From positions 44,764,001-44,828,000 of the forward strand of contig NC_092350.1 of the NCBI RefSeq assembly GCF_963676685.1: a stretch of 64,000 bases of DNA, read 5' to 3'. Under the pieces are notes generated by a model. That model did not search any database. It was not told where the DNA came from and saw only the letters and a program-made list of their open reading frames with translations. This DNA comes from Mytilus edulis (taxonomy: Eukaryota). A program made the translations under genes and the position numbers. This document shows, piece by piece, positions 1,880 through 59,752 of the stretch; position 1 is the first letter of the stretch, and every line of letters begins with the position of its first letter.

Positions 1880-2067
1880 AACAGCTATAGGTCACCGTAC
1901 AGCCTTCAACGATAAGCAAAATCCATACCGCATAGTCAGCTATAAAATGTGCCAAAATGACTAATGCAAATGAGAAAAGTAACAGCATGTTGTATGTACA
2001 AAACAATGAACGGAAAACAAATACAATATACAGCAACAAACGACTACCAATACCACGTGACCAATAC
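1880..2067 (-). mobile_element. Dispersed SINE-like/non-autonomous repeat that hosts the 42-bp array; near-identical copy at ~3525-3705
   Basis: 'cagctataggtcaccgta...gcaacaaacgactaccaataccacgtg' occurs at 1882 and 3526. Related copies lie at ~11975-12090 and, in the opposite orientation, at 31460-31757. Confidence 0.6.
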
Positions 2068-4645
2068 ATTACAGACTTCTGACTTTGGACAGACAAACGA
2101 CTACCAATACATTACAGACTTCTGACTTTGGACAGACAAGCGACTACCAATACATTACAGACTTCTGACTTTGGACAGACAAACGACTACCAATACATTA
2201 CAGACTTCTGACTTTGGACAGACAAACGACTACCAATACATTACAGACTTCTGACTTTGGACAGACAAACGACTACCAATACATTACAGACTTCTGACTT
2301 TGGACAGACAAACGACTACCAATACATTACAGACATCTGACTTTGGACAGACAAACGACTACCAAAACATTACAGACTTCTGACTTTGGACAGACACGTA
2401 CACGACTACCAATACATTACAGACTTCTGACTTTGAACATACAAACGACTACCAATACATTACAGACTTCTGACTTTGGACAGACAAACGACTACCAATA
2501 CATTACAGACTTATGACTATGGACAGACACACGACTACCAATACATTACAAACTTCTGACTTTGAACATACAAACGACTACCAATACATTACAGACTTCT
2601 GACTTTGGACAGACAAACGACTACCAAAACATTACAGACTTCTGACTTTGGACAGACAAACGACTACCAATACATTACAGACTGCTGACTTTGGACAGAC
2701 ACACGACTACCAATACATTACAGACTTCTGACTTTGGACAGACACGTACACGACTACCAATACATTACAGACTTCTGACTTTGGACAGACAAACGACTAC
2801 CAATACATTACAGACTTCTGACTTTGGACAGACAAACGACTACCAAAACATTACAGACTTCTGACTTTGGACAGACAAACGACTACCAAAACATTACAGA
2901 CTTCTGACTTTGGACATACAAACGACTACCAATACATTACAGACTTCTGACTTTGGACAGACACACGACTACCAATACATTACAGACTTCTGACTTTGGA
3001 CAGACACGTACACGACTACCAATACATTACAGACTTCTGACTTTGGACAGACAAACGACTACCAATACATTACAGACTTCTGACTTTGGACAGACAAACG
3101 ACTACCAATACATTACAGACTTCTGACTTTGGACAGACAAACGACTACCAATACATTACAGACTTCTGACTTTGGACAGACAAACGACTACCAATACATT
3201 ACAGACTTCTGACTTTGGACAGACAAACGACTACCAATACATTACAGACTTCTGACTTTGGACAGACACACGACTACCAATACATTACAGACTTCTGACT
3301 TTGGACAGACACACGACTACCAATACATTACAGACATCTGACTTTGGACAGACAAACGACTACCAAAACATTACAGACTTCTGACTTTGGACAGACAAAC
3401 GACTACCAAAACATTACAGACTTCTGACTTTGGACAGACAAACGACTACCAATACATTACAGACTACTGACTTTGGACAGACAAACGACTACCAATACAT
3501 TACAGACTTCTGACTTTGGACAGACAGCTATAGGTCACCGTAAGGCCTTCAACGATAAGCAAAATCCATACCGCCTAGTCAGCTATAAAATGTGCCAAAA
3601 TGACAAATGCAAATGAGAAAAGTAACAGCATGTTATATGTACAAAACAATGAACGGAAAACAAATACAATATACAGCAACAAACGACTACCAATACCACG
3701 TGACCAATACATTACAGACTTCTGACTTTGGACAGACACACGACTACCAATACATTACAGACTTCTGACTTTGGACAGACAAACGACTACCAAGACATTA
3801 CAGACTTCTGACTTTGGATAGACACACGACTATCAATACATTACAGACATCTGACTTTGGACAGACAAACGACTACCAATACATTACAGACTTCTGACTT
3901 TGGACAGACAAACGACTACCAAAACATTACAGACTTCTGACTTTGGACAGACACACGACTACCAATACATTACAGACTTCTGACTTTGAACATACAAACG
4001 ACTACCAATACATTACAGACTTCTGACTTTGGACAGACAAACGACTACCAATACATTACAGACTTCTGACTTTGGACAGACACACGACTACCAATACATT
4101 ACAGACTTCTGACTTTGGAAAGACAAACGACTACCAAAACATTACAGACTTCTGACTTTGGACAGACAAACGACTACCAAAACATTACAGACTTCTGACT
4201 TTGGACAGACACACGACTACCAATACATTACAGACTTCTGACTTTGAACATACAAACGACTACCAATACATTACAGACTTCTGACTTTGGACAGACAAAC
4301 GACTACCAATACATTACAGACTTCTGACTTTGGACAGACAAACGACTACCAATACATTACAGACTTCTGACTTTGGACAGACAAGCGACTACCAATACAT
4401 TACAGACTTCTGACTTTGGACAGACAAACGACTACCAATACATTACAGACTTCTGACTTTGGACAGACAAACGACTACCAATACATTACAGACTTCTGAC
4501 TTTGGACAGACACACGACTACCAATACATTACAGACTTCTGACTTTGGACAGACACACGACTACCAATACATTACAGACTTCTGACTCTGGTCAGACACA
4601 CGATTACCAATACATTACAGACTCCTGACTTTGGACAGACACACA
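2068..4645. repeat. 42-bp tandem repeat (AACGACTACCAATACATTACAGACTTCTGACTTTGGACAGAC)n in two blocks (~2068-3524 and ~3705-4645)
   Basis: Directly visible 42-bp period with high identity. Occasional 46-bp variants carry an extra CGTA. The blocks are separated by a re-copy of the upstream flank. Confidence 0.97.
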
Positions 4646-11178: not shown

Positions 11179-11476
11179 TGACGTGACATGTCGGACAGTT
11201 TTAAACAATTATGCCATATTTGTTGTCACGTAAATGGGCGAAGCAGTTCATTTAGGACAGTTGGCTCTCACTTTTTTTTACAAACTTCAGACACTGTATT
11301 TGATTGGTCACTTGAAGTTTACATCGCCTCCATTCGTGGTATTGCTAATGTTCCCATTGCGTCACGAATTAAATAGAAAAAAATCTATAAATATTGAAAA
11401 ATCTAAATTAATCGTTCACTTACTTCTGAACTTGGATCTACTAAGAAAGACTAATTCTTTTCCTGAAAAGGTAGGA
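11179..11476 (+). promoter_or_regulatory. Candidate Pol II promoter and non-coding first exon (~11418-11470), possibly of the neuropeptide gene
   Basis: CRE-like TGACGTGA (11179), GTCACGTA (11225) and TTGCGTCA (11357); ATTGG (11303); TATAAATA (11386); Inr-like TCACTT ~31 nt later; donor AAG|GTAGGA at 11471. The first coding exon starts at an acceptor, so an upstream exon must exist. Confidence 0.45.
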
Positions 11477-17441: not shown

Positions 17442-17539
17442 ATGAACATGAAGCAAAATACAACAAGTATAATTGTAGCAGTAACGATATTATTAGCATG
17501 TGTAGTACAAGCAAGATATACAGATGATGACTTAGATCG
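17442..17539 (+). CDS. Shared exon: signal peptide and short acidic pro-region (MNMKQNTTSIIVAVTILLACVVQA-RYTDDDLD(R))
   Basis: Acceptor tttttgcag immediately before the ATG; hydrophobic core ending in VQA; donor CG|GTACGT, phase 2. Confidence 0.9.
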
Positions 17540-20500
17540 GTACGTTTTGTTTTTATATTTGTGTATGTGTTTTTCAGTATGTAATTTTTGTTTTCGTCGG
17601 TATTCAGTTTTTTTATAGACATGTTCGTGTATATGTGGGTATTCACTTTTCACATTGATTGTATGCGTACCTTAACTATGCGTGGATATGTTGTCCTGTA
17701 ATAGACTTCTCCTTGTTTTCTTTTGTTGCAGTTTTCTTTCCGAAATGAACACATTTGGTGAAATCGAAGACTTCATATCCAAGCGCGTGTTTCGTAGTCG
17801 CTTTGAAATATTCGATTACTTTTCAAAGATCCTAAATACCTTTCTTTCTTTCTTTATTCATGTCTGGAGTACACATTATACATTTACGATTCAATATTCT
17901 GTATATATGTACAGACATATTATGAACACTTTCGAAATATTTTTATAAAGCAAGATCGAAAAAAAGGATTTAAACTTTTTGATATATTTAACAGATATTG
18001 CAAGGCTGCCCCTTTGAAAGATTATAGAAAAAAATTGGATGTCTGTCAAATCTTAGATTTTTACTCCCTTTTTTGTATTTTATATTTTTCACAACAATGA
18101 ATGTTGATATTTTAATCATTGAGAGAATATTTTTAAAATAGAGTTGAAAAAGTAACGTTTACTGCCAGCATGTGAAAAGTCCATTTTATAAGACATCTGA
18201 ATGAAACGCAAGACATTTTGGGATTTTGTCACCTGTTTGGCATGCAGCGTACTCAGTTAATATACATTGACACAAAAACATATTCATTTATAAAAAGCAA
18301 AATGAGGACAATACATTATAATTTTCTTATTATATAAGCTACTCAAAGCGCAGTCCGCGCTCAAGCGATTCCAATTCACATATATATGGATTACCAAACC
18401 CATGTTTGAAAAAAGCGAGACTTGCATGTAAACCTGATATTCTTGATGAGTGTTTATATGAAGGAAAGTCTTCAGCAATATATGTGAGTAATGTTAATTC
18501 GAATCTACGCTCTCCTGTCTCCTGTGAAACATTGCATTGCATACATTATACATCGGGTTTGATGGAACGTTGATTTGTCTAAATCTTACCCATTTTACCT
18601 TTTCTATTGTCAGTTTTTATTTATCAATCAAATGTGTTATTTGTTTGTTCTCGTCCCTTAAATAATAGATTTAAATTTTATTTTTATTTCAAAGTTTGTT
18701 GCCGTTTTTGCGTTTTTTGTTTGTTAGTGTGAAGTTTCCCTCAGCCTTCAATTTCAAACTATACTTATTTTTACTTTTTCGTAGCGATTTTTTGATAGAA
18801 ATATTTAAATTTTGAAGTCTGTGTATATTTTACACAATTTATTTATGGTAGAAATAAAGCAATTGTTTCATACCATTAAAATACACCAACAATATTCAAA
18901 CGACAGCAAGCAGATGCACAGAAATGATATTCTTCTTAGTTGAAAACAACTTTTCCAAGTCATTCTCGAACATGCTCTCATCCATCAGTTTTCAACACGG
19001 TTCATGAATAACCTCTTAAATTGAAAAGACGTTTTTCATTCAGCAAAATAACTGTGTGAATCTTCTATCTGGAATTAATATCAAAAAGCTGTCGACATTA
19101 TCTATGAAGTATTTCTTTTTGATACTATTTCCGGTTTGTTTGGAATGGAAATATTCAATATTTGTCAATTGATGTTAAACCTTCTCATTACGCGTTAGGA
19201 GTAAAAAATCAAATACTTCGACGTAACATAAGCCTTTACTAATGCCTTTCCTAGAAAATTCCTTTATACTAATTTATTTGATTTTGTCTGTTAAGATTTA
19301 TATTATCAATCTCAATTTGTTAATTTGAAATCAATTTATCCATACTTTGCGACGAAGCATTTCTGTAATTGTTTACTATTTGAAGATTAAATTACCGTTC
19401 CTCTTTTCATAAGTGCAGTAAAATTGCGGCAGATCATCGCTTTTTCACAGCCACTTTAAACTTGATGCTTCTTCAGTACCGATTGGTTGTTTTATTTATT
19501 CACCAATTAAAGTTAGAAAATTTATTAGATTTGGTTTGCTTCTTTGTTACACAATAAGAATAATCAGCTTCCTACAAGATGATTCGAGAAAAACGACTAA
19601 GCTTTTCAAAACATAGTTTTTTATACAATGTCAAACAAATTATATTAATAGAAATGACAACACAGCATAAAAGTAACAACAATGATTGCATTTGATTACT
19701 TTAATGCTAATAAAACTCTGTACAGAAATGTTTAATAATTGAAGACAAAAATCGTTACAATATGATAGCGTCATAACATATTGTTTAAAATCACTTAGAA
19801 TTCAAATGCTCATATATTTCAAATCTTTTCCATCTAATATTATAGGAAAGAGAGGTTTTAAACGCCAACTATGGATAAATTATACTTTCCCCGCCTTGTT
19901 CTATTTTCTATTTTGAGAAAGAAGATTTTTATAATGTCAGGAGAGTACAGAGAACTGTTATATGATTATTTGATATCATTCTACTATGTACTTTAATCAA
20001 AGCTATATGTTTTAATGCATTGAAAGTCTGCGTTCAAACTAAGATGTATGCAAATTGTTCGAAACAATTCATGCAATATTTTTTTCTGAACAAATCCATC
20101 TAAAAGATCTACTTTTTGAGGACATACCACATTTTGACCGCATTTTCCTCGGTAGATTTCAGTTAATGATTCAAAAAGTTACCAAAGGTTTTCTCAGCAA
20201 CGACTTCATTTTGTTTGATACAGCTACATTTGGACAGTACTTACATTATTTACCTTTAAAATACCCATTTCCCAATTATAACAATAAACCGATCTCGCAT
20301 TTTCTCTCAGAATTTCCTGATATAAATTTTCTGAAGTGAAAAGAAAGCTGTTGAATTAAAGTTTGTAAATCTGCTTTCAAAATCGGAATATATTCGGGAA
20401 TTTACCAAACAACCGCAAAAGAAAAGACTAAATAATTTGAAATTCTTTTGATAATATAATTCTTTATGTATATGTATGCTTCTTGGCTTTACAAAAATAT

Positions 20501-23500
20501 CGACTCCTGCCCATGAGAAGAGAACTCGCAAATCAATAAGTTTGGCCATAATTCTCTTAATGAAAGTCCTGTAATAATTGGACATGTGTACGCTGTCCTC
20601 CAATATGGCGGCAAAAGATAGAAAAGCTCGAAACCTTATCCCTCAATGGGTTTTTTTTCATTACTTGTGTTAAATGTCATGTTTTACCATAATACACAAA
20701 CAGTAGTAGACAGGAAGAAACGACTTTACGTCTTTTCGATGAGATTAGGAATTGTGTCCTACGACAGTTATCCGTTTAAGTGTAGACTTTTCTACGCGAA
20801 TATCTGTTTGTATGTATATATGTGTGTGTTTTCATGTTATATGTTTGTGACTGTGTTTTCAGTGTTAAACGTCAAATGGCCGATGCAAAGGCCTCTGAGT
20901 ATCTAGCCCTGATCAGACTGGGCCTAGCCAGTGGGTGTCGAGAGATAGGGTGCGGCCTGATTGATTTTCACACCAGGTACAACAAAATGTACGTGTTGTT
21001 TCGTCCAAGTAACGTAACGTCAAGTGAAGTGGTATATATGATGGAATGATATATACTATGATATAACCATTATAATATAATATATATATATATTGATATC
21101 TAGCATGAAACAGTATATGCATTAATATTTATATATTTTAATATTTATCAATGAAAATTTGCAATATAATCTTATGTTACACAGTCCAACTTGTAAATGC
21201 GCCATTTCCTACAATATATGAAATATTTGTTAACATTGACGAACCCAATTAATAAAATTTTTTCACAAGTTGGACTATGTAGGCTTTTTATTGGCATGCT
21301 GACACACATGCTTTTAATTTAGTTCAAGAATGATCATAAGTTTAAACGATATATTGAGCAGAACATTGAAACAGAACTTAAAACGTGACAATAATGAAGG
21401 ATAAACCAATGAAAGTTAATAATATTTTTGTTTATTTAACTCATTTAGAGATCAAAAAGCCTTTGACTAGCGTAGAATGAGTTAAGCGTTACCCCATATT
21501 TACTGACTTTTAATTTATGAATTGACTAATTCAAAATTACAATCAAAATAATCTCCAATTATAAGACAGTAATTGCTCATATATTTTGAAATTCAAAACT
21601 TTCAAAATATTATGATCATCATTAGGTTATTCAACCAATAGATACAATCGTCACTTTCGAATTAGAATCTTAAGAAGAAAAAACCAAGCAGGTGATATTT
21701 AGAATGTTTATTCATTCATGATCATCTACTGGGTTGTAACCTATCTTAATCGTCTCTTTTGACATTCATGATCGGACCATTTCAACTTCATTGATGTAAC
21801 GTTTTTAAACTCTGCTCGATAAAACTCCGTTTATTTATTATTTTGCATGATGTTATGTTATATAACGAAGAGGTGGTTTAGAAAGAAAAAAAAAGAAATA
21901 ATTGAAAAAATAATGAGAGAAATTTATCTAAAATCTAAGAAGAAAATAAAACCATTTCTTCCTCTGTGTTATGTATGCTAATATATGCATGTTGCTACTA
22001 CCTTTCACTCACAGGTTTGCCAAGAGGTCATGGTCAGATCAACGTATAGCCGATTATCAAGCCAGACTGGCATTATACCAAGGACGACCTTTACTATCGC
22101 ATGGTCAGTTTGACACAAATAAAATGTAGGTATCAATTTATTTATATTGCAGAAATGACGATGCTTTGCTGCAGCGTTTCCAGGCTCATTTGCATGCTCT
22201 TCCATTTCTTTATGTCATAGAATACTTGATATGCGGGTTCGTTTAAAAAAAATATGGTACATGTGTTTAGGCTCGATACTTACCAAATTGTACCAAATAT
22301 GCAACAGGTATCAAATTTTTATCAACTTCTTAAGGCATAAATACAATGTCATCTTCATATTTATCAATTACTGACCAAGAAGCCGTACATTAACGTATTC
22401 TATGACACAGCACACCATCCCCAATTGCAGCTTCAATGCACTTATAATCTTCCTGGGCATAAACCGCATGCTTGATTTACTACAGATTTGAAAAGCGGAC
22501 GTCTTCAGACCAAAGAATTGCTGAACTTCAGGCGCTGATTGCGTTGTCGCGAGGTAGTGGTATAGTTGGGCATGGCAGAATTGACCCATATGGCATGTAG
22601 GTATCTCTGCAAAATTCGGTCAGGCTTTACGGATGTTTTCTGCATTCAGGTATCTCTGTTATATCCAATCCAGAATCGCTTGATACATCTAGCATGACGC
22701 TATCAATACTGGTAACACTTGCTATTAATAAGGCAGCGAGATAAAGTGTGTTCTTACAGAAACAAAATATTCTATTTCTATGAAGGAGTTAAAGAGAAAA
22801 ACAAGTGCTTAGCTACGTTTTTTCCTCCGAAGAAAAACGAACAAACAAATAAAGCAAAACGATTCATGCTTGAAAAAAACTAACATCGAAACATGCATAT
22901 ACATTTATTATGAATCAAACAAAAACATTTTAAATCTTCTATATTTGAATATAATCCCGAATATTTCATGCAATATCTCTGACAATGTCTGATGAACAAT
23001 AATGCTATAGAAGAACGTCATGGACTATAAGCAGAGAGGAATTCGTTACTTTTAAAAGAGCACTGTTATTTGTAAAACACAATTTACAAAATGTTACCAA
23101 ATGAGTTACAGACATGCGCACATGTTCATTATATGGCCTTACAATATTAGTCTTTCTCTTTGACACATTCTGTTATTGTTCATGCTTATTAGTGAGCTAC
23201 GTAAAATGCGCAAAACTGAACATATTTCTGCTTTACAACGTTAACGTCACAAAATTAAATCATTCTGCATTTATGATTCTTATTCTGCTGTTGTTCAGCG
23301 AAATGTTCATACAAAATTGCAACTGATGTCAGCGATATGGATTCAACTGCAGTGTTCTCATTACTTCAGTTTGTTTTGCACATAAGTGCGCAGACAGCAG
23401 TGCACTCACTTGCTAGAAAATAATACGTTACGACAAGCAAACCATCTCCTAGTATACATTACTTGGTATACTAGAAATTGCTTATTAGAAGAAACAAAAT

Positions 23501-24174
23501 TAATTTAAAAGCAAAAGTAATTGGAAAATTAAATTAATTGCAAATATCTATATTTAATTGAGATACATAATATAAATAGACCATTATACCAAAAAGAACG
23601 CTGCAGCTTTATACACATTTAAAGAGACCACGTCCACAGTGCTAAGAAAATGAGTACGCGTTCATTGCTTAAAAATATACAGGTATTACAAAAGGTTCAG
23701 CTCACAAAAGCGATACTCAGAGTGTCCTCCATAGAATTCTTGAATTTTTCTTTACAACTATTGTGCTAATTTTTCAAAACCTCATTGGTAGGCGAAAGCT
23801 TCGTCATTGATCGCTTTGCTTGTCGTCGTTAGAAAAAAGGACAAAAAAAAACACAAAAGACAAGAAACGTACTGCAAATACACAGTTAGTTAAACACTTT
23901 TAATCTATCAATATAGAACCGATACATCAATTTCAAAGGAATAAAAAAAAAAAAAATTGATCAAGTATATTGAAAATAAATTAAAATGATTCATGCAAAA
24001 TTAAATTGTGTTTCTAACTATCCAAACACCCATATGTGCGCAATCCAAATTTTTCTGATGCATTTCTTTTTTCATTCCTTTCACAGTGGTAGAAGGAAAA
24101 GAGATACTGGAATACTCAGAACACTCATAAACAAAAACAGACTTTTGCAAAATTCTGACGACAGCCATTTATGA
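17442..24174 (+). CDS. PTH-like (iPTH/PXXXamide-type) neuropeptide precursor gene with three alternative mature-peptide exons; isoforms of 99/98/98 aa
   Basis: Join 17442-17539 + [20863-20976 or 22015-22125 or 22486-22596] + 24087-24174. All junctions are GT-AG and phase 2. Each join gives an open frame with a signal peptide, KR site, homologous peptide and GRRKR. Confidence 0.9.
20863..20976 (+). CDS. Cassette exon A: (R)VKR-QMADAKASEYLALIRLGLASGCREIGCGLIDFHT(S), 35-aa Cys-pair peptide
   Basis: Acceptor gttttcag|T; donor CAG|GTACAA; 114 nt; creates an RVKR furin-type site. Confidence 0.88.
22015..22125 (+). CDS. Cassette exon B: (R)FAKR-SWSDQRIADYQARLALYQGRPLLSHGQFDTNK(I), 33-aa peptide
   Basis: Acceptor cctttcactcacag|G; donor AT|GTAGGT; 111 nt; SDQRIA and HGxxD motifs; not in the ORF track. 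Confidence 0.88.
22486..22596 (+). CDS. Cassette exon C: (R)FEKR-TSSDQRIAELQALIALSRGSGIVGHGRIDPYG(I), 33-aa canonical PXXXamide/iPTH-type peptide
   Basis: Acceptor tttactacag|A; donor AT|GTAGGT; 111 nt; SDQRxAEL..L.AL and GxGxxDPxxI-G-RR signature; not in the ORF track. Confidence 0.92.
24087..24174 (+). CDS. Shared terminal coding exon: GRRKR amidation/cleavage signal plus C-terminal peptide DTGILRTLINKNRLLQNSDDSHL*
   Basis: Strong polypyrimidine acceptor tttcttttttcattcctttcacag|T GGT AGA AGG AAA AGA; stop TGA at 24172-24174. Confidence 0.9.
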
Positions 24175-25519
24175 TCTGATAAATTTGTAAGTATATTTTG
24201 TAAATTATCAAATTGACTCATCTTCTTGTCTTCTATTATTGCGATGAATAGCTGTATCTTTAGTATATGCATTCTCGCACTTAAAACATTTGAAAAAAAT
24301 CTTGGAGGTTTCTACAATTCCAAGTTTCTGTCCTTACTTGATATACCTTTTATATAGTGCAGGACTGCTGAGGATTTATACCTGCTCTCCCGTCAATCCA
24401 CGATACAGAAACTACTATGTGAACATAATTCATTCTTCAATAGAGAAAAAAACAAAACAAGTGTTACATGGCATGTACAGAGCATCCAAAGATGGGATCG
24501 AACTCTCTCTCTATATATATATTCAACATCTGATGAATTAGAAATGCATACAGTTTGGTAATGCGCATGCTGTATAAGTGTTTCCTTATTGTTAACCAAA
24601 GTTACCCAACTCATGACTTTCGAATATATGACCTTATTCCCTTAGCTTCATTGATTACGTGATACTCATCATGGAAAGTGTCACATAACACCAAATTACA
24701 TAGAAACTAATAAAAAAAAAATCAAAATTATATGAAATGTATGTAAATATGTATTTTTTTGTTTATAATATCAACCACGTTTGTTTCAGGTAGATTTATC
24801 CGTCCAAAGAGCTTTCGTAGTCATCTAAATTTCTGTGGAATAATGAAGCTTCAAAAACAATTACGGACAATCAATTTCCGGAATCAAATTTACTTTATTT
24901 TTGTTTCGTCTCAGGAAATCTAGCTGCGCTAGACGTCTTGCTATTTATTTTGTTTATTTATTATATTTTGACGAAAATGTGATATTAAACGTGAGGCACT
25001 TTGCCTGTTTATATTGTGTATATCTGATAAGAATGGTTGAGATTTTGAGTACGTAAATAAATGGATCCATTTATTGCAATTTATGACTATGCTTTAATCT
25101 TGTTTTGTACCTGACCAGACACACAAATTCAGAAAGGTCACAGAATATTTTACCACCTTTGATTTAGATAGCTGTAAAAGCTAGTTTTACAAAGATTCCA
25201 AAATCCTAATATGCAGCTACATAAATGCATTGGAGTAGTAAAACAAATCAAAACAAGAACTCTCTTTCAACTTGTTTTAAAGCTGTTTCGAAGACAACTG
25301 CGAAAAAAACACATTTCCACAAATCAAATCTTTTCATTAACACATTGATGATACATCATAATTTTTGAACGGACATTGCACAAAGTTATACTTTTCTGTC
25401 TATGGTGTCTTCTTACTAAACCATTGAATGTATACTGATTGACACTTTAGTTTGGTGAACTTGATTTATTTGTTACTGCATTTGAACTAGATTCTAGTAA
25501 TTTCAAGTACGTCTGCAAA

Positions 25520-40904: not shown

Positions 40905-42596
40905 ATGGCAAGTAACTGGAGTGTTTGCGGGGTCTGTGATTATCGCCACATTACCAAGCCATCAGTTGTCTGGTGTTCTGAATGTGATGAAGGGCTTTGT
41001 GAAGAATGTAAAGATCATCATAGTATTTCTAAAGGAACAAGAAGTCATGGCACGGTGTCTATTGCCGAGTACCAGAAACTGCCAAACAAAGTATTACAAT
41101 TGGCACATTCTTGTAGTAGGCACAATGAGAAATATGTCCTCTTCTGTAAAAAGCATGACTGTCCGTGCTGCAAGAAATGTGTTGTTGACTCACACATTGA
41201 ATGTAAAGAATTGACCGATATCGATGATATTACACGAAACATCAAATCTTCAAATGCTTGTGTAGACATCGAACAGACCTTGTCAGAAATTGCCGAGAAT
41301 ATCAAAAGACTTCGAATAAACTGGGAAGAAAACTTGACGTCAATCGGGAAAAAGAGTAGATAAATTCACAAAGAAGTTTTAGAAAGTCGTGCTAGGATTA
41401 ATCGTCTTCTTGATAAACTTCAGGATACTATATTGAAAGATCTGAAAACGAGAGAAGAGGAAGAAAGTAACAAAATACGACAACTACTGAAGTCATTAAA
41501 CGACAAGGAAAAAGATATCACAGAATACCAAACAAATATTGCCAATATAAAGCAGTACGCATCAGACCTGCTAACGTTCCTCGCTTTGAAACATATAGAA
41601 AAAGATGTCGCGGTTGACGAAGCCTACATTCAATCAGTAGTAAAAAATTTGGGTGCGAATCAAATTGATTTTTCGTGCAAGATTAATCCCTCCTTACAAG
41701 ATTTAATATCTACCGTTCAGAAATTTGGAGATGTCGTGGTGACAGCAGATCCATGTAATGTCCTAATCCTGAAACATAAGGATAAACAAGCACAGATGAT
41801 GGTAGCTGTAACACCAATAACTATCGATAGCCTGAACCCTACATTGCTGCAGACCCTGGATACAAAGCTGACCTGTGTAACTGGATGTTCGTTTTTGCCT
41901 GATTGTAGGATGATATTTTCTTGCGCAATAGAACAGATGATAAGAGTTTATAAGCCAGATGGTTCTCTGGATTTTCATATTGGGAACTTATGTCCTGTAT
42001 TTGATGTGACACATATTATAGCAGAAAACGCGATTGCTTTGACATCTGGTTATCTCGAGGACTCACTTCAAATTAATTTGATTGACCTTAAAACACGGAA
42101 AGTAAAGAAAACATTGAAAATTAATGCAGTAAACAGTGGAATAGCATACAGTGAAGACAAGTTGATTTATTGTGCTGGGGAGAAAGGAATACAAATGATA
42201 AACCTTAATGATGAATCCATTGTTAATATTACTAAAACTAAAATGAGTTCATGGTCATACGTTGCATGTTTCGGAGAGAAAATTTTCTATACCGACTGTA
42301 ACGACGGTAGTGTAACCTGCATCGACTTTCAAGGGAACATACAATGGGTGTTTGAAAATAAAATGGTTCTTAGAAACCCATTTGGTATATCTGTAGATGG
42401 AGATGGAAATGTTTACGTAGTAGGAAGTAATAGGAACAATGTAATTGTTATCTCTCCCAACGGACAAAACATAAGACAGCTTCTTACTAGTAAGAATGGA
42501 CTAAAGTCGCCAATAGCGATACACGTTGATAGATCAAATTATAAAATGTTAGTCGCAAATTCAGGGAAACAAGCGTTCTTGTATGATCTTAAATAA
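40905..42596 (+). pseudogene. RING-less B-box/coiled-coil/NHL-like beta-propeller (TRIM-like) gene with one in-frame nonsense codon (TAA 41361-41363)
   Basis: ORFs 40905-41363 and 41433-42596 share a frame. Two B-box Cys/His clusters, a helical region and NHL-type repeats (PFGISVDGDGNVYV). Read-through length is 563 aa, in a single coding exon. Confidence 0.85.
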
Positions 42597-48360: not shown

Positions 48361-50462
48361 AAAATTGAGAAAGGAAATGGTGAATATGTCAAAGCGACAA
48401 CCACCCGACCATAGAGCAAACAACAGCCGAAGGCAACCAATGGGTCTTCAATGTAGCGAGAATTCCTGCACCCGTAGGTGTCCTTCAGCTGGCCCCTAAA
48501 ATATGCATAATAGTACAGTGATAATGGACGTCATACTAAACTCCGAATTATACACAAGAAACTAAAATTTAAAATCATACAAGACTAACAAAGGCCAGAG
48601 GCTCCTGACTTGGGACAGGCGCAAAATTGCGGCGGGGTTAAACATGTTTATGAGATCTCAACCCTCCCCCTATACCTCTAGCCAATGTAGAAAAGTAAAA
48701 GAATAACAATACGCACATTAAAATTCAGTTCAAGAGAAGTCCGAGTCTGATGTCAAAAGATGTAACAAAAGAAAATAAATAAAATGACAATAATACATAA
48801 ATAACAACAGACTACTAGCAGTTAACTGACATGCCAGCTCCAGACCTCAATTAAACTGATTGAAAGATTATGTCTTCATCATATGAATATCAGGTACAAT
48901 CCCCCCCGTTAGGGGTTTAGTATCATACTATCATAAAATATATGAGAAGAACATAACCCGTGTCATGCCAACAACTGTTTCTTTTAGAAATAAATGTGTT
49001 TAGTTCCGATGCAAAGACCCTATCAGTGAATCAATGTTAAAGCCAAAATATGCAATCTTTAATGACCTGACAACAGTATCGTAACTATATCCCCTTTTAA
49101 TAAGTCTATTTAAAGGTTTTGTTAGTTTCTGAGGAGAATACTGACATTTTTGTGCTTTATAAAGAATATTTCCATAAAATTTTGGATGTGAAATACCTGA
49201 ACGTATAAGATGTCTGCATGTTGAGTTATATTTACGAATTATTTCCTTATACCGGTGATAAAATTTAGTAAATGTTTTGACCAGTTTGTGATATCGAAAA
49301 CCCTGGTGTAATAATTTTTCAGTAATACATAAATTTCTCTCGCTAAAATCTAATACATTGTTACATACACGAGCGAATCGTACAAGTTGAGATATATAAA
49401 CACCATAAGATGGTGACAAGGGAACGTCACCATCTAAAAATGGATAATTAACAATAGGAAATGAAAAATCATCTCTTTTATCATAAATTTTTGTATTAAG
49501 CTTCCCGTTTATGATATAGATATCAAGATCGAGGAAAGGGCAGTGGTCATTGTTATCATTAGCTTTATTTAAAGTAAGTTCTACAGGATAAATTTCTTTA
49601 GTATACATACTGAAGTCGTCATTATTTAGAGCCAATATATCATCCAAATATCTAAAAGTATTGTTAAATTTTTGTATCAAATGTTGTTTTGATGGGTCTT
49701 TGCTAATTTTAGTCATAAATTGTAACTCATAACAATACAAAAACAGGTCCGCAATAAGTGGTGCACAGTTAGTCCCCATTGGAATTCCAATAACTTGACG
49801 ATATACGGAATCTCCAAAGCGAACAAAAATGTTATCAAGTAAAAATTCAAGTGCATAAATAGTATCAAAGCATGTCCAATTGACATAGTTCTTTTGTTTA
49901 TTGCTACTAAAAAATGATCTAAAAGAGTTTGAACATATGTACTCGCATTCCGACTTTTTAAATGCCCAGTTAATTAGGGATGTGAATTTTTTCTTAATAA
50001 GAATATGAGGCAAAGTGGTATATAGGGTAGAAAAATCAAAACTTTGAACAGATTCAAAATCACCAATATATGCATGCAATTTATCAAGTACTTCCAACGA
50101 GTTTTTGACACTCCAAAAGTAATTAATTCCACTATTTTCAAAGGCCTTATTTGAACAATTTATTATCAGGTTTTTTATTGTACCAAGTGTACTAGTAAGT
50201 AAAACAGACAATTTAGTAGTTGAACAATGGCTGGAAGATGAAATAAATCTATATTTGTAAGGTTTTTTGTGCAGCTTCGGAAGCCAGTACATAGTTGGGA
50301 CTTTCATTGTGTTTGGTTCTGCTTGTAAAGAAGTAGCTAAAAGTTTATGTTTGTTACAGATGTCGTTTTCTGAAAATGAAGTCAGTTGGAATGTTGGTGA
50401 ATTCGTGATTTCCTTTTGCAGAACCTCTATATAAAATTTACGTCAAACAATAATGATATTAT
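48361..50462 (-). mobile_element. 5'-truncated Penelope-like retroelement (probably Naiad-type)
   Basis: Uninterrupted RT ORF followed by a ~640-bp 3' region that also occurs as solo copies; no endonuclease C-terminal to the RT. Confidence 0.8.
49000..50307 (-). CDS. Reverse transcriptase of a Penelope-like element (N-terminally incomplete)
   Basis: Motifs YWLPKLHK, FDFSTLYT, YRQVIGIPMGTNCAP, FRYLDD, FLDL, YDKRDDF. Confidence 0.9.
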   Translation of the reverse strand: MKVPTMYWLPKLHKKPYKYRFISSSSHCSTTKLSVLLTSTLGTIKNLIINCSNKAFENSGINYFWSVKNSLEVLDKLHAYIGDFESVQSFDFSTLYTTLPHILIKKKFTSLINWAFKKSECEYICSNSFRSFFSSNKQKNYVNWTCFDTIYALEFLLDNIFVRFGDSVYRQVIGIPMGTNCAPLIADLFLYCYELQFMTKISKDPSKQHLIQKFNNTFRYLDDILALNNDDFSMYTKEIYPVELTLNKANDNNDHCPFLDLDIYIINGKLNTKIYDKRDDFSFPIVNYPFLDGDVPLSPSYGVYISQLVRFARVCNNVLDFSERNLCITEKLLHQGFRYHKLVKTFTKFYHRYKEIIRKYNSTCRHLIRSGISHPKFYGNILYKAQKCQYSPQKLTKPLNRLIKRGYSYDTVVRSLKIAYFGFNIDSLIGSLHRN

Positions 50463-58038: not shown

Positions 58039-59752
58039 ATGGCAACAAGTGAAGTTGTACATTTTGGACAGTGCTGTTCAAAAGCTAAAAACAAAACAGC
58101 TGATATCTGGTGTGACAACTGTGGAAAAGGTTTTATGTGCATCATGTTCGAAGAATCACAGGAAATCGAAATTGACACTGAATCACAAGACTGTAGATAT
58201 GGAAACTTATATTAAAATCCCGAAATTTATCCGTTCTACCAGTACAGAATGCTGTAAACATCAACAACTTCTAGTTTCTTACTGTCCAAATCACTTAACT
58301 CCTTGCTGTAAAGGATGTATATCAAATGATCATGCGAAATGCACTGGAATTGTGAGTTTAACCAGTACAGTCGAGAAAACTAATGTAGGAGATATACAGC
58401 AAGCCTTGCAGAAAGATTCTAAATCAATTCTATGTTCCTTTGACAAAATCACAGACAAACTTCTGAACAATGTGAAAAAGAGGGACAATGAATATGAAAT
58501 AATTAAATTGACAGCTAGCACAATTCGGAAAGAAGTAAATGAACAGATAGACCGGTTAGAAACAAAACTTTACAGGGAAGTCGATGCTTTAAAGGACCTT
58601 CAAAATGTAAAAACAACCGACTCCAACAATAGAATAAAGGGAAAGAAGAATGATGTTGTAGAAATAGTAAAACAATTACAACTGATAGAAAGGAATCATC
58701 CACAGATTCAAACTTTCCTCGCAGTACATCAGATAGAACAACAATTACATCAATATGAACTATCCGCACAGGAATTAGCACAACAAGATACATGTTACGA
58801 ATTTGATCTTAGTTTGAAGTATGACAAAATGTTTGAACAGACATTTTCCAATTTTAAATTACTAGAATCATTCGGAGATATATCAATGCGCAAAAAAGAA
58901 ATGTCTACCACTGATATTGCATCATTGGAAACGAAAGATGCACAAGCGCAAACAAGAGAACAAACCTTGATTCATAAAATGACTTTGAAACTAGAATCAA
59001 AATATAGCATAAAAGGCATTAAGACTGTTAGTGACATGATTTGGTTAACAGATGGTCGCTTCGCTGTCATTGAAGAATACGGCAGAATTTCCATGCACTC
59101 GTCGGATGGAAAATTTCAGAAATATTTATCCGTTACCGGTAAGGCTTTTAGTGCAGCGCGCATTGATCAAGACAATATCGTAACTAGCTATCCCGACGAA
59201 AAAAAGATAAAATTCATCAATCTATCAAATGAAGTTATAACAAATATTATTACACTGGACAAACCTTGTAGAGGTTTATCTTTTTTCAATGATACAGTCG
59301 TCGTAGCGTTATCCCATAACGATGCTGAATATAAAGAAATTCGAAAGATTAATTTGAAAGGAAATACTCTGAGTTCAATATACATTCAGAGCGAATCAAC
59401 TATATATTATCTCATTCATTCGAATGATAGAGTATTCTTAAGCGATTATATCGAAGATGCAGTCCGATGTATTGATATATCTGGAAATCAAATATGGGAA
59501 TTTAAATGCGATGAAATGAAAGGACCATGCGGCCTCTGTACAGATAATTATGGTAACATTTTTGTCGTTGCATTTGTTTCTGGCAATATATCAGTTATAT
59601 CTGCAGATGGCAAACAGAGCCATGTTATGTTAACTGACGATGGTGTTGTTTCAGAACCACAATGTATTTGTTTTAACAACAAAGATCGTATTGTGTCAGT
59701 TTGTCATTTTGGAGGTGAATATTTGATGAACTACAAAGTATTGTTTAAATGA
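58039..59752 (+). pseudogene. Second RING-less B-box/coiled-coil/NHL-like (TRIM-like) gene with a +1 frameshift in the T run at 58131-58134
   Basis: Likely true start accag|aatATG (MATSEVVHFGQC...WCDNCGKG) continues in another frame as LCASCSKNH. Removing one T restores WCxxCxxGLCxxC. NHL-type repeat PCGLCTDNYGNIFV. Confidence 0.8.

What the first reader, a model, noticed from the sequence alone, without database searches (positions are those of the whole stretch)
17442..24174. One gene, three hormones: an array of duplicated cassette exons encoding distinct PTH-like (iPTH/PXXXamide) neuropeptides
Seen in sequence: between a signal-peptide exon (ending CG|gt) and a GRRKR exon (starting ag|T) lie three homologous 111-114 nt exons, all phase 2/2 with canonical splice sites. 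Each begins with a KR site. Predicted products are A pQMADAKASEYLALIRLGLASGCREIGCGLIDFHTS-NH2, B SWSDQRIADYQARLALYQGRPLLSHGQFDTNKI-NH2 and C TSSDQRIAELQALIALSRGSGIVGHGRIDPYGI-NH2. They share D-x4-[ED]-x2-A-x3-L and G-x-x-D-x4-G-RRKR. Established knowledge: SDQRxAEL...GxGxxDPxxx-amide is the signature of arthropod iPTH/mollusc PXXXamide peptides, ligands of PTH-receptor-like class B1 GPCRs. Inference: the exons are spliced as alternatives, so one promoter and prepro scaffold deliver three different ligands, a calcitonin/CGRP-like logic extended to a 3-way array. Exons B and C are invisible to the ORF track and would probably be missed by annotation. I cannot confirm whether this architecture is already published.
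Basis: partly seen in the sequence, partly recalled or inferred. Interest (0 to 1): 0.95.

Follow-up and report, generated by a model that had tools for sequence, protein, structure and literature searches.

The report
Mussel QSamide/PXXXamide gene with cassette exons
This is a real mussel (Mytilus) neuropeptide gene whose three related middle exons can be included alone or in pairs to yield different PTH-like hormones, but the same design was published for the Pacific oyster in 2021 and the gene is already in public annotations.

Summary
There is a signal-peptide exon (17442-17539), three homologous phase-2/2 exons (A 20863-20976, B 22015-22125, C 22486-22596) and a shared last exon that starts with G-RRKR (24087-24174). 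All have AG/GT splice sites.

Exon A is a QSamide-type unit with two cysteines. B and C are PXXXamide/iPTH-type units.

Seven annotated Mytilus proteins are reproduced exactly by these boundaries, junction codons included. They are A, A' (a second donor 12 nt downstream), B and C, each alone, plus B+C and A'+B. So the exons are used as alternatives, but in combinations rather than strictly one at a time. Only the cassette joined to the last exon receives the amidation signal.

The same QS / SWSDQ / TSSDQ order occurs in oysters and scallops. Réalis-Doyelle et al. 2021 (PMC8398477) described this differential splicing in the Crassostrea gigas QSamide3/PXXXamide gene, with mass-spectrometry support.

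Verdict: a real gene, correctly read, and a new member of a known kind. Interest is modest.

The parts
11188..11470 (+). Upstream leader (5' UTR) exon. The donor is AAAAG|gtagga at 11470/11471. The 5' end is not defined. It holds an ATG at 11348 that is in frame with the main ATG.
   Evidence: The N-terminal extensions of M. galloprovincialis proteins P0009/P0082 and P0007 map here by tblastn at 88-94% identity. Sequence and donor read.
17442..17539 (+). Exon E1: start codon, signal peptide (MNMKQNTTSIIVAVTILLACVVQA) and acidic spacer. It ends in phase 2 (CG|gt).
   Evidence: Identical to the N-terminus of XP_063398929.1 and XP_071121081.1.
20863..20976 (+). Cassette A, QSamide-type: VKR | QMADAKASEYLALIRLGLASGCREIGCGLIDFHT, with two Cys. 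The proximal donor is CAG|gtacaa. Joined to the last exon it gives ...HTS-G-RRKR.
   Evidence: Scores 69.7 bits against the QS-type profile. Used in VDI22275.
20977..20988 (+). 12-nt extension of cassette A (form A') up to the distal donor AAAAT|gtacgt. It adds RYNK, giving ...HTRYNKI-G-RRKR.
   Evidence: The alignment with the B/C donors is. Used in VDI22277 and in M. edulis XP_071121081.1. RYNKM is conserved in another mussel's unspliced ORF, P0030.
22015..22125 (+). Cassette B, PXXXamide-type, SWSDQ subtype: FAKR | SWSDQRIADYQARLALYQGRPLLSHGQFDTNK. Donor AAT|gtaggt.
   Evidence: Scores 66.4 bits against the PX profile. Groups with the oyster and scallop SWSDQ cassettes, support 98/94.
22486..22596 (+). 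Cassette C, canonical PXXXamide/iPTH-type: FEKR | TSSDQRIAELQALIALSRGSGIVGHGRIDPYG. Donor CAT|gtaggt.
   Evidence: Scores 76.0 bits against the PX profile. Used alone in VDI22276 and after B in XP_063398929.1.
24087..24174 (+). Shared last coding exon. Its first base completes the junction codon. Then follow G-RRKR (amidation donor plus cleavage site), a C-terminal peptide DTGILRTLINKNRLLQNSDDSHL and the stop codon. The 3' UTR continues downstream; the first AATAAA on the + strand is at 24709.

Best explanation
The stretch is the Mytilus (M. edulis species complex) orthologue of the oyster QSamide3/PXXXamide gene, a member of the protostome iPTH/PXXXamide/QSGamide neuropeptide family. The gene has a leader exon, a signal-peptide exon, three paralogous cassette exons and one shared last exon. 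Each cassette brings its own N-terminal KR cleavage site and peptide body but has no C-terminal processing signal. The Gly amidation donor and the RRKR site lie in the last exon. All cassettes are phase 2/2 and multiples of 3 nt, so any subset keeps the reading frame. The cassettes are therefore included singly or in tandem. Whichever cassette is spliced directly to the last exon yields a C-terminally amidated peptide: ...HTS-NH2, ...RYNKI-NH2, ...TNKI-NH2 or ...PYGI-NH2. A cassette lying upstream in a tandem form is instead cut at the next cassette's KR and stays non-amidated with a short extension. Shown here: the exon anatomy, the homology, an exact match to seven annotated congeneric proteins, and the conserved cassette order in oysters and scallops. 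Shown by others, in C. gigas: the transcripts and the peptides by mass spectrometry. Inferred: that the same transcripts and peptides are made in this mussel, how the splice choice is regulated, and signalling through a PTHR-like class B1 receptor.
For: The exon boundaries, phases and translations are. A profile of the three cassettes finds 78 proteins at E<=1e-3 among 1.84 billion, 24 of them at E<=1e-10, and many have 2-3 matched stretches. The Mytilus proteins are XP_063398929.1 (M. trossulus, B+C), XP_071121081.1 (M. edulis, A'+B), M. galloprovincialis VDI22275 (A), VDI22277 (A'), VDI22278 (B) and VDI22276 (C), and XP_076115465 (B). All seven are reproduced residue for residue by the window's exons and junction codons; the only difference is one N>S change in XP_076115465. 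The M. galloprovincialis annotation was built from PASA transcript alignments with refinement of alternatively spliced exons, and its models carry the leader exon 6 kb upstream. Oysters (C. angulata and C. gigas X1, O. edulis, Saccostrea, C. virginica) and the scallop M. yessoensis hold QS + SWSDQ + TSSDQ units in the same order before G-R[RK]KR. C. gigas isoforms skip one or two of them. In the unit tree the QS and PX types separate at 100/99, and the B-type cassettes of mussel, scallops and oysters form a clade at 98/94. PMC8398477 describes differential splicing of the Cragi-QSamide3/PXXXamide gene. Its supplement shows QSamide3 ending ...DIFRS-GRRKR, the tandem form ...DIFRRYDKRSWSDQ..., an amidated PYKI peptide and a non-amidated pyroGlu QS3-like peptide, both detected by MS.
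Against: The isoforms are annotation models, and the three RefSeq species each show a single, different form, so some could be pipeline choices rather than abundant transcripts. No peptide or receptor data exist for Mytilus.
Confidence: 0.85

Rival explanations
1. Strict mutually exclusive splicing: every transcript carries exactly one of A, B or C, so each mRNA yields one hormone.
For: Four M. galloprovincialis models and one RefSeq model carry a single cassette.
Against: XP_063398929.1 carries B+C and XP_071121081.1 carries A'+B. Oysters and scallops have two- and three-cassette proteins, and C. gigas MS detected peptides assigned to the tandem QS3-like/PYKIamide precursor. No docking/selector type of inverted repeat was found. 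The 360-nt B-C intron is too long for steric exclusion. Every exon subset stays in frame.
Confidence: 0.07
2. Constitutive inclusion: all three cassettes are always spliced in, giving one multi-peptide precursor, and the single-cassette models are annotation noise.
For: The RefSeq X1 forms in oysters and in the scallop hold all three units.
Against: No Mytilus protein with all three cassettes is in the 5.8-billion-protein collection, although its length lay inside the search range. Seven different partial combinations are annotated. In C. gigas, transcripts with skipped cassettes were assembled and quantified. Each cassette's last two bases give a sensible residue before G-RRKR (S or I), and the spacing D-x4-G is conserved only after direct joining to the last exon.
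Confidence: 0.03
3. One or two of the cassettes, most plausibly the divergent B or the proximal-donor form of A, are rarely or never used in this species, and their isoforms are prediction artefacts.
For: B is the fastest-evolving unit (branch length 2.37) and has lost the Pro of PXXX (…DTNKI). The proximal donor of A (CAG|gtacaa) is weak.
Against: B keeps an open frame, the KR site, both splice sites and SWSDQRIA, and it is orthologous to cassettes retained in oysters and scallops. It appears in four independent annotations across three species. An unspliced B exon from another mussel is also intact (P0022).
Confidence: 0.05

Closest known systems
Crassostrea gigas QSamide3/PXXXamide gene (Réalis-Doyelle et al. 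2021, Mar Drugs 19:452, PMC8398477; LOC105323263)
   Same: Same layout: one signal exon, then a QS-type cassette, an SWSDQ-type cassette and a TSSDQ-type cassette in that order, then a shared last exon beginning G-RRKR. The junction logic is the same (…R/S/I junction codons). Cassettes are skipped or combined, and amidation goes only to the unit next to the last exon.
   Different: The species and sequences differ; the signal peptide and the C-terminal peptide are unrelated in sequence. Mytilus exon A has two donors that give two different amidated C-termini, which I did not see described for oyster. Mytilus cassette B has lost the Pro of the PXXX motif. There are no peptide data for Mytilus.
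Insect/tick iPTH (Tribolium castaneum iPTH, Xie et al. 2020, PMC7224569; Ixodes ricinus iPTH, bioRxiv 10.64898/2026.06.22.733765)
   Same: Shared features are a signal peptide, a dibasic site, a conserved N-terminal SD…, a C-terminal G plus basic amidation/cleavage signal and a mildly conserved Pro at -4. Cassette C fits this pattern closely.
   Different: The arthropod precursors described hold a single peptide. No QS-type unit and no cassette array is reported there. Receptor activation has been shown only in arthropods.
Lophotrochozoan QSamide/QSGamide precursors (Platynereis, Aplysia, Lottia, scallop)
   Same: Exon A shares the pyroGlu-type KRQ start, an ...AEY.A...L core, two Cys in C-x5-CGL(V/I)D, and a C-terminal S-G-basic signal when joined by the proximal donor.
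   Different: In stand-alone QSamide genes the unit is the only peptide. Here it is one option within a mixed QS/PX array. No stand-alone QSamide paralogue was detected in this genome, though the sensitivity of those searches is limited.
Vertebrate calcitonin/CGRP (CALCA) alternative processing
   Same: One promoter and one signal sequence deliver different peptide hormones according to the splice choice.
   Different: By established knowledge, CALCA switches between alternative 3' exons with their own polyA sites and their own processing signals. Here the cassettes are internal paralogues, can be combined, and borrow their amidation signal from a common terminal exon.

Membership tests
iPTH / PXXXamide neuropeptide precursors | N-terminal signal peptide followed by a dibasic (KR/RR) site in front of the peptide | tested here: met
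   E1 encodes MNMKQNTTSIIVAVTILLACVVQA|RY..., read by eye because no signal-peptide predictor was available. Each cassette starts x-x-KR.
iPTH / PXXXamide neuropeptide precursors | Conserved peptide core SDQR(I/L/M)AEL.AL.AL...GHG..D(P)xxx | tested here: met
   C scores 76.0 bits and B 66.4 bits against a profile of 91 PX-type units from other taxa. The library search with the cassette profile gives E down to 1e-42. C keeps the Pro at -4; B does not (DTNKI).
iPTH / PXXXamide neuropeptide precursors | C-terminal Gly plus basic residues (amidation and cleavage signal) directly after the peptide | tested here: met
   The signal is present only after splicing to exon 24087-24174 (G-RRKR). The junction codons were checked against seven database proteins.
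iPTH / PXXXamide neuropeptide precursors | The peptide activates a PTHR-like class B1 GPCR | not testable with these tools
   Shown for Tribolium. states it is still unconfirmed for lophotrochozoans.
QSamide / QSGamide peptides | KRQ start, two Cys in ...GC.....CG(L/V)(V/I)D..., and a C-terminal xS-G-basic signal | tested here: met
   Exon A scores 69.7 bits against a profile of 27 QS-type units. The proximal donor gives HTS-GRRKR. Compared with the alignment in the oyster paper's supplement.
Orthologue of the C. gigas QSamide3/PXXXamide gene | Same cassette order (QS, SWSDQ, TSSDQ) between one signal exon and one G-RRKR exon, with cassette-wise orthology | tested here: met
   The B-type clade has support 98/94 and the QS/PX split 100/99.
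Alternatively spliced cassette-exon gene | Transcripts with different exon combinations exist in this species | tested here: inconclusive
   Seven annotated protein forms in three Mytilus species match exactly, and one of the annotations is PASA transcript-based. No reads could be examined.
Mutually exclusive exon cluster | Exactly one exon of the cluster per mature mRNA | tested here: not met
   B+C and A'+B forms occur in Mytilus, and two- and three-cassette forms occur in oysters and scallops. No selector/docking pairing was found.

The most novel reading that the evidence does not exclude
In mussels the gene may work as a combinatorial, position-dependent amidation switch with at least four amidated outputs. 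Besides the choice among A, B and C, a conserved pair of donors in exon A would toggle the QS-type peptide between a ...HTS-NH2 and a ...HTRYNKI-NH2 C-terminus. The three-cassette array would date back to the common ancestor of mussels, oysters and scallops. The two-type (QS + PX) array, with the amidation signal on a separate exon, would date back to early molluscs or even annelids. The dual donor and the depth of conservation are, as far as I could find, not described.
Probability: 0.45. Interest if true: 0.4.

Novelty: new member of a known kind. Interest (0 to 1): 0.3.

Why it matters
The result is a clean, coordinate-level gene model for the Mytilus iPTH-like hormone gene, which public databases list only as 'uncharacterized protein'. 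The oyster design of several related hormones from one gene, with amidation decided by which cassette abuts the shared last exon, also holds in mussels and scallops. It therefore appears to be old within bivalves. That helps anyone deorphanising the molluscan PTHR-like receptors, because it gives the exact peptides to synthesise. It is not a new principle.

Tried and rejected
Splice-site conservation therefore rests on proteins and on unspliced ORFs. Many PX-type exons in other molluscs read ...M when unspliced where the spliced proteins have I.
- Exons were searched by reference, and database proteins were compared exon by exon plus single junction codons.
- A fourth cassette or a relic: none was found. 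The only trace is a 9-residue KRQQADAQ match at 18898-18921 (E 0.096 in the region), which is probably chance.
- Paralogues elsewhere in the 1.37-Gb assembly: none was detected with the cassette profile, with single cassettes, or with a stand-alone QSamide precursor. The first-look filter is coarse, so this is weak evidence of absence.
- Docking/selector RNA pairing for exclusive splicing: only AT-rich inverted repeats at chance level.
- The bacterial promoter/terminator scan and the AATAAA count were uninformative.
- Separate transcription units for B and C: rejected. No signal-like exon lies in the 1-kb and 0.36-kb introns, and all annotated forms start from the same E1.
Full report
**Observation.**
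- E1 (17442-17539) starts right after an acceptor (ttgcag|ATG). It encodes MNMKQNTTSIIVAVTILLACVVQARYTDDDLD and ends CG|gtacgt.
- Three exon-like segments follow, each with AG/GT borders: A 20863-20976 (114 nt), B 22015-22125 (111 nt) and C 22486-22596 (111 nt).
- All three are phase 2/2, and each opens with x-x-KR.
- The last coding exon (24087-24174) starts T|GGT AGA AGG AAA AGA (G-RRKR) and ends in TGA.
- B and C share 51% of residues (tblastn E 8e-8 within the window). A is more distant (42% to C, E 0.014) and has two cysteines.
- Family profiles built from other species' units score A at 69.7 bits (QS-type), C at 76.0 bits and B at 66.4 bits (PX-type).
- No further cassette lies between 9 and 27 kb.

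Twelve bases after the A donor there is a second donor, AAAAT|gtacgt (exon end 20988). It aligns with the AAT|gtaggt and CAT|gtaggt donors of B and C.

**What it is.** A profile of the three cassettes, searched against 1.84 billion representative proteins, found 78 proteins at E<=1e-3. Many of them have two or three matched stretches. The best hits are small secreted precursors of molluscs, annelids, nemerteans and arthropods that carry the ...SDQRIAELQALIAL...GHG..DP... motif.

The source names place the window in the Mytilus edulis species complex.
- XP_063398929.1 (M. trossulus) is E1+B+C+last.
- XP_071121081.1 (M. edulis) is E1+A'+B+last, where A' is exon A read to the distal donor.
- M. 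galloprovincialis VDI22275, VDI22277, VDI22278 and VDI22276 are A, A', B and C, each alone.
- XP_076115465 (M. galloprovincialis) is B alone.

I compared these proteins with the window exon by exon and junction codon by junction codon. All seven are reproduced exactly; the only difference is one N>S change in XP_076115465.

The coding exons are identical among the three species, so they do not tell which one the window comes from. The leader exon differs from M. galloprovincialis (88-94% identity). The assembly has 1.37 Gb in 2368 contigs.

**Gene extent.** The N-terminal extensions of the M. galloprovincialis models map to 11188-11470, which ends in AAAAG|gtagga. So a leader exon lies about 6 kb upstream of the ATG exon. 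Ab initio predictors would hardly find that exon. The annotation was built from PASA transcript alignments, with a step that refined UTRs and alternatively spliced exons. This is indirect support that the four single-cassette forms come from transcripts.

**Conservation.** Oysters (C. angulata and C. gigas X1, Ostrea edulis, Saccostrea, C. virginica; 175 aa) and the scallop Mizuhopecten yessoensis (180 aa) carry a QS-type unit, then an SWSDQ-type unit, then a TSSDQ-type unit, in that order, before G-R[RK]KR. C. gigas also has forms that lack one or two units.

In a tree of the units, the QS and PX types separate at 100/99. The B-type cassettes of mussel, scallops and oysters form one clade at 98/94. 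The sequences are short and several branches are long, so only these two splits should be trusted.

The three-cassette array therefore predates the split of these bivalve lineages. The clam Mercenaria, chiton, gastropods, octopods and Capitella show one or two QS units plus one PX unit. Some of these taxa also have forms without the QS unit.

Unspliced ORFs from other molluscs end ...M exactly where the spliced proteins have I. This fits a conserved AT|gta donor in phase 2.

**How it works.** Each cassette supplies a KR site and a peptide body. The Gly amidation donor and the RRKR site sit on the shared last exon.
- Only the cassette joined directly to that exon is amidated. The predicted ends are ...FHTS-NH2 (A), ...FHTRYNKI-NH2 (A'), ...FDTNKI-NH2 (B) and ...DPYGI-NH2 (C).
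- In tandem forms the upstream unit is released at the next cassette's KR, without an amide.
- Every cassette is symmetric and a multiple of three bases, so all subsets stay in frame.

The anatomy is shown here. Production of the peptides is shown only in C. gigas. Regulation of the splice choice and signalling through a PTHR-like receptor are inferred.

**Comparison with what is known.** Réalis-Doyelle et al. 2021 (PMC8398477, section 2.5.6 and Fig. [quoted passage not shown] It gives either a QSamide or PXXXamide peptides.

Their supplement shows several relevant things:
- QSamide3 ends ...CGLVDIFRS-GRRKR.
- The tandem form reads ...DIFRRYDKRSWSDQ....
- MS detected amidated SWSDQRM...DPYKI.
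- MS also detected a pyroGlu, non-amidated QS3-like peptide.

Thiel et al. 2021 equate iPTH/PXXXamide with the QSGamides. They note that receptor activation in lophotrochozoans is still untested. Xie et al. 2020 deorphanised the beetle receptor.

The window's gene is thus the mussel member of a published design. The cluster is not mutually exclusive in the strict sense. I found no selector/docking pairing.

**Limits.**
I therefore have no reads for this genome and no orthologous genomic loci.
- The isoforms are annotation models, not measured transcripts.
- No paralogue was found elsewhere in the assembly, but that search is coarse.

**Verdict.** It is a new member of a known kind, of modest interest. 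The double donor of exon A and the age of the array are the only points that may be new.

Noticed in passing
window 11188-11470: The leader exon holds ATGs upstream of the signal-peptide ATG. The ATG at 11348 is in frame (41 codons) with the main start, which explains the N-terminally extended M. galloprovincialis database proteins (138-196 aa). The longer frame from 11188 has a stop codon in this genome. These extensions would bury the signal peptide and are probably 5' UTR mis-called as CDS.
   Followed up: partly
window 20977-21000: The roughly 24 nt after the proximal donor of exon A (reading RYNKMYVL when unspliced) are identical at the protein level in another mussel's unspliced ORF (P0030), although the exon itself differs at 9 of 37 residues. 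This may reflect a conserved dual-donor or a splicing-control element.
   Followed up: partly
window 18898-18921: A short KRQQADAQ match to the start of QS-type cassettes inside intron 1 (E about 0.1 in the region), within a 15-codon open stretch. It may be a relic of a second QS exon, as gastropods and octopus have, or simply chance.
   Followed up: no
window 2060-4641: A satellite-like tandem array with a 43-bp unit, about 60 copies and 90% matches.
   Followed up: no
window 40905-42596 and 58049-59752 (+ strand): Long ORFs with a B-box zinc finger followed by a beta-propeller (NHL/SGL-like) region. They look like TRIM-NHL-like genes, which I know to be much expanded in bivalves. They are unrelated to the finding.
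   Followed up: partly
window 49000-50307 (- strand): A 435-aa ORF with no Pfam match. It was not examined further.
   Followed up: no
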